Assembly: GCA_965240325.2 (NCBI GenBank)
Contig: OZ251226.1
Span: 2,294,001 to 2,358,000, forward strand
Reading direction: 5' to 3'
DNA: 64,000 nucleotides
Source: Rebecca billardiae RCC1528
Lineage: Eukaryota; Protista; Haptophyta
In this document: positions 2,852-3,187 of the stretch, piece by piece
How the letters are laid out: the number at the start of each line of letters is the position of its first letter
How positions within the stretch are numbered: the first letter of the stretch is position 1
Program-made: the position numbers and the translations under genes
Notes under the pieces: generated by a model
Databases searched by the model: none
What the model was told of the DNA's origin: nothing
Seen by the model: the letters and a program-made list of their open reading frames with translations, nothing else

Positions 2852-3187
2852 ATGACGAGTGGTGACCGGCCTGAACCGCTGAAGTTGAACAGTGTCAGTG
2901 GGCAGAACACTCTCTAGCTGTCCGAGTGCCAGAATCGATTACTTCAGCACGATAATAGCGGATAGTAGACTAAGTAGGTGTAGACTCGTCTAATCTGTCT
3001 ACGTAGCTTAAATATACTCTAATGAGTGGTGACGCCTGAACCGCTGAAGTTGAACAGTGGGCAGAACACTCTCTAGCTGTCCGAGTGCCAGAATACTTCA
3101 GCACGATAATAGCGGATAGTAGTCAGTAGACTAAGGTGTAGACTCGTCTAATCTGTCTACGTAGCTTAAATATACTGCTCTACTAAT
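2852..3187. repeat. Tandem duplication of a ~165-170 bp unit (two copies, ~2852-3021 and ~3022-3187)
   Basis: GAGTGGTGAC...CCTGAACCGCTGAAGTTGAACAGTG...GTCTACGTAGCTTAAATATACT occurs twice in direct orientation. Confidence 0.95.

What the first reader, a model, noticed from the sequence alone, without database searches (positions are those of the whole stretch)
2852..3187. Repeat copies diverge by short duplicative or palindromic insertions, not substitutions: a possible footprint-generating mutational process in intergenic DNA
Seen: the two tandem copies differ essentially only by 2-7 nt indels: GAC[CG]GCC, CAGTG[TCAGTG]G, GAAT[CGATT]AC (making palindrome AATCGATT), TAA[GTA]GG, AGTAG[TCAGTAG]AC. 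Unrelated repeats show the same pattern: TTTA[TAATTATA]ACG and CAG[GA]GTAGG at 36756 versus 33028; CTGA[TGA]GC, AAAT[ATAT]CGG, TTC[ATC]GCG and GGC[GC]TC at 40643-40800 versus 41304-41397. The spacers read as stuttered, micro-palindromic text (e.g. GTAGTACTACTAAGTAGTAGTACTAGT near 30744). Established: DNA-transposon excision and hairpin opening/end-joining leave such footprints. Inference: repeated cut-and-repair cycles confined to intergenic islands are lengthening and scrambling them, either by runaway transposon in/out cycling or by an undescribed indel-based repeat-inactivation system.
Basis: partly seen in the sequence, partly recalled or inferred. Interest (0 to 1): 0.8.

Follow-up and report, generated by a model that had tools for sequence, protein, structure and literature searches.

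The report
Insertion-biased micro-duplications in repeat copies
In this GC-rich alga, copies of non-coding repeats drift apart through tiny duplicating insertions about as often as through single-letter changes, and five times more often than through deletions. This is an unusually strong form of a known kind of mutation, with transposon scars as a minor contributor.

Summary
The two tandem copies (2857-3023 and 3024-3187) share 151 aligned bases with no substitution and differ by six indels of 2-7 nt.

I polarised the changes against consensus sequences of two dispersed repeat families sampled across the genome. Private changes number 58 substitutions, 50 insertions and 10 deletions (insertions versus deletions, P = 1.6e-7). 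A third, small family shows the same trend.

- **Size:** the median insertion is 3 nt.
- **Form:** 23 of 66 insertions are perfect tandem duplications (8.4 expected by chance). Another 11 have the form X-filler-X.
- **Palindromes:** palindromic or inverted templating is not enriched.
- **Timing:** insertions per copy fit a Poisson distribution within one subfamily, so they accumulate steadily rather than in bursts.
- **Reality:** some insertions are inherited by sister copies, so they are not read errors.
- **Transposon scars:** one 28-nt insertion is a proven scar. An 8-9-nt target duplication flanks about 17 nt of the terminus of a terminal-inverted-repeat (TIR) family.

My best reading is an insertion-biased small-indel regime made by fill-in and rejoining of short staggered breaks, or by slippage. 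Excision scars are a minority, and nothing points to a repeat-inactivation system.

Comparable ratios are published for Schizosaccharomyces pombe. This scan had already noted the same phenomenon on other DNA of this genome, and earlier follow-ups disagreed about its cause.

The parts
2857..3023 (.). Tandem copy A (167 nt). Relative to copy B it has four extra segments: CG at 2867-2868, CAGTGT at 2890-2895, TCGAT at 2935-2939 and AGT at 2973-2975.
3024..3187 (.). Tandem copy B (164 nt). Relative to copy A it has two extra segments: AGTAGTC at 3118-3124 and GCTCTA at 3177-3182.
3187..3313 (.). Perfect (TC)63 microsatellite directly after copy B.
32847..32988 (+). F2 family copy. F2 is the 3' end of a retroelement-like repeat truncated at variable 5' positions. 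Against the consensus this copy has a +2 (GA tandem duplication), a +1 and about 4 substitutions.
32659..32744 (-). Partial inverted F2 copy: 4 substitutions and no gaps against the consensus.
36767..36893 (+). Older F2 copy. It has a +8 AT-only insertion at 36769-36776 that makes a TTATAA-TTATAA duplication, a +2 (GA) at 36786-36787, a 3-nt deletion and about 11 substitutions.
40643..40800 (.). Expanded left hairpin of an F3 element, with several 2-4-nt insertions and an internal partial duplication relative to the canonical hairpin.
40801..41310 (+). F3 element body, 510 nt against a 469-nt consensus. The extra length comes from insertions absent from the consensus, most of them private to this copy (e.g. 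TCGG, TAAGC, CA, a 13-nt segment, TTA, GG).
41304..41397 (.). Canonical F3 hairpin: a 40+40-nt palindrome, 98% complementary.
35593..35692 (+). Two tandem F4 units of 48 nt. The first carries a 6-nt imperfect tandem duplication (AGTATT before AGTAAA).
35812..35864 (-). Inverted F4 unit with a 3-nt insertion.
31651..31698 (-). Further F4 unit.

Best explanation
Non-coding DNA of this genome is under an insertion-biased small-indel mutation regime.

**What happens.** Short insertions, mostly 2-3 nt and occasionally up to about 30 nt, arise about as often as base substitutions and about five times as often as deletions. Most are new tandem duplications of the adjacent 1-9 bases (X-X). Some carry 1-19 unrelated bases at the junction (X-filler-X).

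**Most likely mechanism.**
- A break with short complementary overhangs forms, from two nicks a few bases apart on opposite strands.
- Both ends are filled in.
- The ends are rejoined by Ku-dependent end joining, sometimes with added or captured bases at the junction.
- Primer slippage may contribute to the duplications that have no filler.
- A minority of the longer X-filler-X events are excision scars of cut-and-paste transposons.

**Consequence.** Young duplicates such as the tandem pair at 2857-3187 differ first by insertions.

**Shown:** the architecture, the polarity, the ratios, that insertions are inherited, and that the genome has Ku and family-X polymerase (PolX) genes. **Inferred:** the origin of the breaks, the fill-in step and the joining pathway.
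For: **Tandem pair.** 0 substitutions and 6 indels in 151 aligned nt.

**F2 family.** 57 non-redundant copies were chosen only by an exact 29-mer at the element head. Private events number 26 substitutions, 31 insertions and 4 deletions in 6,024 nt. A conservative recount gives 17, 22 and 3 in 5,281 nt.

**F3 family.** 24 copies of 469 nt give 41 substitutions, 28 insertions and 7 deletions carried by at most 2 copies.

**Combined.** Insertions versus deletions are 50:10, P = 1.6e-7. Indels are 60 of 118 events, against about 1/9 if indels were as rare as I assumed typical (P = 1.6e-26).

**F4 family.** About 8 insertions and no deletion in 16 short copies.

**Form of the insertions.**
- 23 of 66 are perfect tandem duplications against 8.4 expected; 0 of 2,000 simulations reach 23.
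- 11 are duplication plus filler against 2.4 expected.
- The first third of an insertion is 75% identical to its neighbour and the last third only 30%.

**Tempo.** Counts per copy are not over-dispersed (chi-square 19.6, 22 df, p = 0.6) and there is no significant hot-spotting (P = 0.23).

**Real, not error.** The same insertions are shared by sister copies: L070, L108 and L119; the C18 pair; and TGA and TTC, each in 5 F3 copies.

**Repair genes.** Two Ku loci and two PolX loci are present.

**Precedents.** S. pombe mutation-accumulation lines gave 288 insertions against 47 deletions, with an indel rate equal to the single-nucleotide rate (PMC4704713). Small tandem duplications arise from fill-in of break overhangs followed by non-homologous end joining (NHEJ) (PMC8355091).
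Against: - The sample is small: three repeat families and one tandem pair, about 260 kb of a 72-Mb genome.
- No outgroup, strain or read data were available.
- The tandem pair itself cannot be polarised.
- The break-and-fill-in origin is inferred. Slippage alone could make the duplications that lack filler.
- Four of the six indels in the tandem pair fall in the 5-7-nt X-filler-X class, which also fits transposon scars.
- Three independent F2 copies carry insertions at exactly the same base, and one of them is a proven scar.
- F2 differences might in part date from reverse transcription.
- The excess of local duplicates in unique low-GC DNA is only modest.
- The young 1.5-kb palindrome shows 3 substitutions and essentially no indel, though these numbers are too small to weigh much.
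Confidence: 0.5

Rival explanations
1. Most of the insertions are scars of cut-and-paste transposons that landed, duplicated their target and excised again. They leave the target duplication, trimmed or with a few filler bases. Intergenic islands are the preferred landing zones.
For: - In F2 copy L073, an 8-9-nt duplication flanks a 19-nt filler whose first ~17 nt recur in the genome. The 19-mer has 23 hits at up to 2 mismatches and 0 in the reversed control. The hits include inverted pairs about 240 nt apart, so it is a TIR terminus.
- L087 (+AGT) and L113 (+AGTCTT) have insertions at the same base.
- 11 events have the X-filler-X form, and there is a small bump at 6 nt (7 of 66).
- Four of the six indels in the tandem pair are 5-7 nt.
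Against: - 51 of 66 insertions are 1-4 nt, too short to contain a 7-9-nt target duplication.
- Duplicated lengths range from 1 to 9 nt, with no shared filler or target motif that I could see.
- Palindromic, P-nucleotide-like additions are at chance level (3 observed, 4.1 expected) and inverted templating is absent.
- A second long filler (20 nt, L070) is not a repeated terminus.
- There is no significant hot-spotting overall.
Confidence: 0.25
2. The differences were made when the copies were made, by template switching or slippage of a reverse transcriptase or a rolling-circle replicase. They are not mutations acquired after insertion.
For: F2 copies are truncated at variable distance from one end, like non-LTR retroelements. 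One F2 insertion (L113) resembles the sequence of the other subfamily at that spot.
Against: - The same pattern appears in the unique tandem pair and in F3 and F4, which are not obviously retroelements.
- The younger F2 subfamily has about 10 times fewer insertions per nt than the older one, as expected for accumulation over time.
Confidence: 0.06
3. The indels are assembly or sequencing artefacts of a long-read assembly.
For: Some 1-nt changes lie in T or C runs of F3. No reads were available to check.
Against: - Most events are 2-28 nt and lie at non-homopolymer sites.
- Several are shared by independent sister copies at different loci.
- One contains a recognisable transposon terminus.
Confidence: 0.04
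4. A dedicated, repeat-targeted inactivation system that works by indels, analogous to RIP, attacks duplicated DNA.
For: All measured events are, by necessity, in repeats. The tandem pair is hit very densely.
Against: - Many F2 and F3 copies are untouched.
- Counts within a subfamily fit a Poisson distribution.
- Substitutions show no directional bias.
- Unique low-GC DNA also shows some excess of 3-4-nt tandem duplicates.
- In-frame short tandem repeats are common in coding DNA.
Confidence: 0.03

Closest known systems
Insertion-biased small-indel spectrum of Schizosaccharomyces pombe mutation-accumulation lines (Behringer and Hall 2015, PMC4704713). The paper also cites C. elegans and haploid S. 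cerevisiae.
   Same: Insertions outnumber deletions about 6:1, and the indel rate is about equal to the single-nucleotide rate. That implies net DNA gain.
   Different: In S. pombe the mean insertion is 1.6 bp, and the paper says small indels occur mainly at microsatellites. Here the median is 3 nt. Most events are new duplications at non-repeated sites, and about a sixth carry junction filler. Here the spectrum is inferred from repeat decay, not measured in lines.
Small tandem duplications from fill-in of complementary break overhangs followed by NHEJ (Schimmel et al. 2021, PMC8355091). Related, from my own knowledge and not read here: tandem duplications at adjacent nicks in plants, and natural rice insertions.
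   Same: The products are perfect or near-perfect tandem duplications with occasional junction bases. That paper calls this a signature abundant in the genomes of species. Ku and PolX genes are present here.
   Different: The break source and the pathway are untested here. The duplications here are much shorter (1-9 nt) than most duplications induced in experiments.
Excision footprints of cut-and-paste DNA transposons (hAT, P/foldback, Tc1/mariner types)
   Same: A target duplication is retained, with trimmed or added bases between the two copies. One event here holds about 17 nt of a TIR terminus.
   Different: Most events are too short for that. They show no fixed duplication length, no common terminal bases that I could see, and no enrichment of palindromic additions.
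Replication slippage at microsatellites
   Same: It gives insertions that repeat the adjacent unit. Some events here lie in T runs or in the CGG-CGG stretch of F2.
   Different: Slippage needs an existing repeat and gives both gains and losses. Here most sites were single-copy before the event, gains dominate 5:1, and filler occurs.

Membership tests
Transposon excision footprints | The flanking direct duplication has the fixed target-site-duplication length of one element family. | tested here: not met
   Duplicated lengths run from 1 to 9 nt, with a mode of 2-3 nt for events without filler and 4-6 nt for events with filler.
Transposon excision footprints | Bases left between the duplicates come from the element's termini. 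| tested here: inconclusive
   Met for one event: the L073 filler is a repeated TIR terminus. Not met for the 20-nt L070 filler. Fillers of 1-7 nt are too short to test.
Transposon excision footprints | Palindromic (hairpin-opening) additions, as in hAT-type scars. | tested here: not met
   3 palindromic events against 4.1 expected. The summed longest inverted match is 52 against 55.7 for the null.
Transposon excision footprints | Events recur at the element's preferred target sites. | tested here: inconclusive
   Three events lie at one F2 site, but the overall count of event pairs within 1 nt is 12 against 9.4 expected, P = 0.23.
Fill-in and end-joining tandem duplications | The product is a tandem duplication of the sequence at the break, with optional junction bases. 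| tested here: met
   23 perfect duplications and 11 duplications with filler among 66 events, against 8.4 and 2.4 expected.
Fill-in and end-joining tandem duplications | The end-joining and fill-in machinery is present. | tested here: met
   Two Ku loci and two PolX palm-domain loci. CST, Pol alpha and ligase IV were not searched.
Fill-in and end-joining tandem duplications | The events depend on NHEJ and on staggered breaks. | not testable with these tools
   Needs genetics or induced-break assays.
Polymerase theta-mediated end joining (templated insertions) | Deletions flanked by microhomology are the main product, and insertions are templated from nearby sequence in direct or inverted orientation. 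| tested here: not met
   Deletions are rare (10 against 50 insertions). There is no inverted templating.
Polymerase theta-mediated end joining (templated insertions) | A Pol theta gene (helicase plus family-A polymerase) is present. | tested here: inconclusive
   Three family-A polymerase loci match bacterial Pol I, Pol nu and Pol theta about equally. The POLQ_helical model found nothing, but its control genomes were also silent.
Repeat-induced mutation (RIP-like) | Directional transitions confined to repeats, arriving in bursts. | tested here: not met
   The 26 private substitutions are spread over 11 types. Insertion counts fit a Poisson distribution. Many copies are untouched.
Microsatellite slippage | Events lie in existing tandem repeats, with gains and losses of whole units. 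| tested here: not met
   Most sites were single-copy in the consensus, and gains outnumber losses 5:1. A minority in T or C runs do fit.

The most novel reading that the evidence does not exclude
A lineage-specific break-making activity nicks non-coding DNA genome-wide with a 2-9-nt stagger. It could be a domesticated or very active transposase or nuclease, or a topoisomerase-like enzyme. Repair of these breaks writes micro-duplications at a rate equal to point mutation, so this alga's intergenic DNA grows and renews itself mainly by insertion.
Probability: 0.12. Interest if true: 0.8.

Novelty: new variant of a known kind. Interest (0 to 1): 0.5.

Why it matters
**If the spectrum is a true mutational bias:**
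- This alga would be a second clear case, after fission yeast, of a eukaryote whose small indels add DNA rather than remove it. It would be the first in which the gains are mostly multi-base new duplications.
- That bears on how genome size, low-complexity intergenic text, microsatellite birth and in-frame repeats in proteins arise.

**Practical consequences:**
- Substitution-based dating of repeats would underestimate their change.
- Alignments of non-coding DNA in this lineage need indel-aware models.

The bias is directly testable with mutation-accumulation lines or with strain comparisons.

Tried and rejected
- **Palindromic or hairpin-opening origin.** Tested by classifying each insertion and by longest inverted match. 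Both are at chance level.
- **Hot-spot clustering in F2.** Not significant.
- **Bursts in particular copies.** Not seen. A weak link with low flank GC is confounded by subfamily.
- **'Stuttered' text in unique low-GC DNA.** Only a modest excess of 3-4-nt tandem duplicates and of 3-5-nt inverted repeats with a 1-nt spacer. The sample was only 10.5 kb.
- **The 1.5-kb palindrome as a counter-example.** It is too young to inform: 3 substitutions outside the apex.
- **Pol theta.** I could not identify it among the three family-A polymerases.
- **Organism identity.**
  - An exact-protein look-up of Vps35 found nothing.
  - The nearest Vps35 relatives are only 53-66% identical.
  - The published Diacronema lutheri assembly (43.5 Mb, 103 contigs) does not match 72 Mb in 41 contigs.
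- **A haptophyte mutation-accumulation paper (PMC7486954).** It reports no indel spectrum.

Full report
**Setting.** The window is G000:C8:2294001-2358000 of a 72-Mb, 41-contig assembly.
- It is eukaryotic. ORFs encode Vps35, FANCI, a GT29 sialyltransferase, a cNMP-dependent kinase and a histidine kinase.
- Coding DNA is 70-80% GC, separated by lower-GC islands.
- The nearest Vps35 relatives are only 53-66% identical and include haptophyte transcripts.
- Earlier notes of this scan call the organism a GC-rich, Pavlovales-type haptophyte. I could not name the species.
- The finding lies in an island (2695-3585) about 0.8 kb past the stop of the minus-strand histidine-kinase gene (4385-6877). By codon-position GC, it is probably upstream of another minus-strand gene.

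**The observation.**
- Copy A (2857-3023) and copy B (3024-3187) align over 151 positions with no mismatch and six indels of 2, 6, 5, 7, 3 and 6 nt (Tandem Repeats Finder row; MAFFT alignment).
- Two indels have the form X-filler-X: CAGTG-T-CAGTG and AGTAG-TC-AGTAG.
- The pair is single-copy in the genome, so it cannot be polarised directly.

**Generalising and polarising.** I used three dispersed families that have copies in the window.

*F2* (window 32847-32988, 36767-36893, and two partial copies).
- It has at least 392 genomic copies of its 29-nt head.
- Copies are truncated at variable distance from that head, like the 3' end of a non-LTR retroelement.
- Sixty copies were fetched, chosen only by an exact head. 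Of these, 57 were non-redundant and were aligned to two subfamily consensuses.
- Outside the conditioned head, events carried by at most two copies are 26 substitutions, 31 insertions and 4 deletions in 6,024 nt.
- Dropping everything within 20 nt of a truncation point gives 17, 22 and 3 in 5,281 nt.

*F3* (window 40643-41397; a roughly 565-nt unit with hairpin ends, often in arrays).
- 24 bodies of 469 nt give 41 substitutions, 28 insertions and 7 deletions carried by at most two copies.
- The window's own copy is 510 nt long because of insertions absent from the consensus, most of them private.

*F4* (a 48-nt unit at 35593-35864 and 31651-31698; at least 263 candidates).
- It shows about eight insertions and no deletion in 16 copies.

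*Combined F2 and F3.*
- 58 substitutions, 50 insertions and 10 deletions.
- Insertions against deletions: P = 1.6e-7.
- Indels make up half of all events.

**Anatomy of the insertions** (66 polarised events).
- The median is 3 nt. Sizes of 2 and 3 nt are commonest, 1-nt events are few, and the tail reaches 28 nt.
- 23 are perfect tandem duplications (8.4 expected; none of 2,000 simulations reached 23).
- 11 are a copy of the neighbouring 2-9 nt plus filler (2.4 expected).
- The part of the insertion next to its template is 75% identical to it. The far part is at background level (30%).
- Palindromic additions (3 against 4.1) and inverted templating (52 against 55.7) are at chance. The 'palindromic' half of the title is therefore not supported.
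- Inserted bases are slightly more AT-rich than their context in F3 (42% against 57% GC).

**Tempo and reality.**
- The older F2 subfamily has 27 insertions in 2,460 nt and the younger has 6 in 5,664 nt.
- Within the older subfamily, counts per copy fit a Poisson distribution (p = 0.6).
- Sites are not significantly clustered (P = 0.23).
- This looks like steady accumulation with age. It does not look like bursts or targeting.
- Several insertions are shared by sister copies at different loci, so they are inherited sequence and not read errors.

**Transposon scars.**
- A note from another window of this genome described foldback elements with CAAGGG termini. That led me to look at the 28-nt insertion in F2 copy L073 (G000:C1:2550685-2551155).
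- There, an 8-9-nt duplication flanks a 19-nt filler. Its first ~17 nt recur in the genome.
- The 19-mer has 23 hits at up to two mismatches and none for the reversed control. The hits include inverted pairs about 240 nt apart, so it is a TIR terminus.
- This is a genuine excision scar or remnant.
- Two other F2 copies have +3 and +6 nt at exactly the same base, which hints at a shared cut site.
- A second long filler (20 nt, L070) is not a repeated terminus.
- Events of 5 nt or more are 15 of 66. They are the only ones long enough to hold a trimmed 7-9-nt target duplication.
- Transposon scars are therefore real, but on present evidence they are a minority. Four of the six indels in the tandem pair fall in this size class, so for that locus the scar reading stays open.

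**Mechanism.**
- The X-X and X-filler-X forms, the scarcity of deletions and the absence of inverted templating fit fill-in of short complementary overhangs followed by end joining.
- The published route is fill-in of break overhangs followed by NHEJ (PMC8355091).
- The genome has two Ku and two PolX loci.
- Pol theta could not be identified. The spectrum does not resemble its typical products in any case.
- Slippage may add to the class without filler.
- What makes the staggered breaks is unknown. Candidates are transposases, closely spaced repair nicks and topoisomerases.

**Comparison with what is known.**
- The ratios are not unprecedented. S. pombe lines gave 288 insertions and 47 deletions, with an indel rate equal to the single-nucleotide rate (PMC4704713).
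- There the mean insertion is 1.6 bp, and the paper says small indels occur mainly at microsatellites.
- Here multi-base new duplications at unique sites dominate.
- I found no paper that describes this for a haptophyte. The one mutation-accumulation study I read reports no indels.

**Earlier notes of this scan.**
- At least eight first-reader notes and several follow-ups on other pieces of this genome describe the same micro-insertions.
- Two follow-ups called it an intense case of the ordinary way insertions arise. One called it transposon scars.
- My polarised counts and the single proven scar place the truth between them, nearer the first view.

**Limits.**
- The evidence rests on three families and about 260 kb of sequence.
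- There were no reads, strains or outgroups.
- I could not compare genomic compartments, because sequence fetching was exhausted.

Noticed in passing
window 6503-8038: A 1.5-kb near-perfect palindrome whose left arm overlaps the 5' end of the histidine-kinase ORF. Outside an AT-rich imperfect apex (about 7246-7269) the arms differ by only 3 substitutions, plus 1 nt at the edge.
   Followed up: partly
window 32658-32935, 33027-33080, 36746-36900; loci L003-L031, L062-L121: The F2 family has at least 392 copies sharing a 29-nt head. Copies are truncated at variable distance from the head, and the longest exceed 1.1 kb at 71% GC. It looks like the 3' end of a non-LTR retroelement. In the window two copies lie head-to-head as an inverted pair.
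   Followed up: partly
window 40643-41397; loci L033-L061: F3 is a unit of about 565 nt bounded by 80-90-nt perfect hairpins. It is often in tandem arrays (for example in the merged region covering G000:C14:1163995-1168947) and the copies are very young. The element type was not determined.
   Followed up: partly
locus L073 (G000:C1:2550685-2551155), positions about 140-190: A 19-nt remnant of a TIR terminus sits inside an F2 copy, flanked by an 8-9-nt duplication. About 17 nt are retained. From memory, that equals the length of overhang left by P-element-type excision. This is a lead only.
   Followed up: partly
window 35593-35864, 31651-31698; several loci next to F2 heads: The 48-nt F4 unit (at least 263 candidates genome-wide) repeatedly lies directly beside the head of F2 copies, for example in L028 (G000:C18:950823-953962) and L023 (G000:C7:476063-479201). 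This suggests a preferred insertion context.
   Followed up: no
whole window, GC-rich parts: Of 65 short tandem-repeat loci (period 6 or more) in GC-rich context, 42 have a period that is a multiple of 3 (P = 4e-7). That fits frequent in-frame micro-duplications surviving in coding DNA.
   Followed up: partly
window 3187-3313, 40477-40562, 41448-41514: Long perfect or near-perfect microsatellites, (TC)63, (ATAC)21 and (TACTC)13, sit at the edges of repeat elements in the low-GC islands.
   Followed up: no
G000:C24:370206-371486, C37:762357-763950, C7:2863458-2864330: Three family-A DNA polymerase genes. None is clearly Pol theta by sequence. The POLQ helical-domain model found nothing in the genome, but its controls were also silent.
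   Followed up: partly
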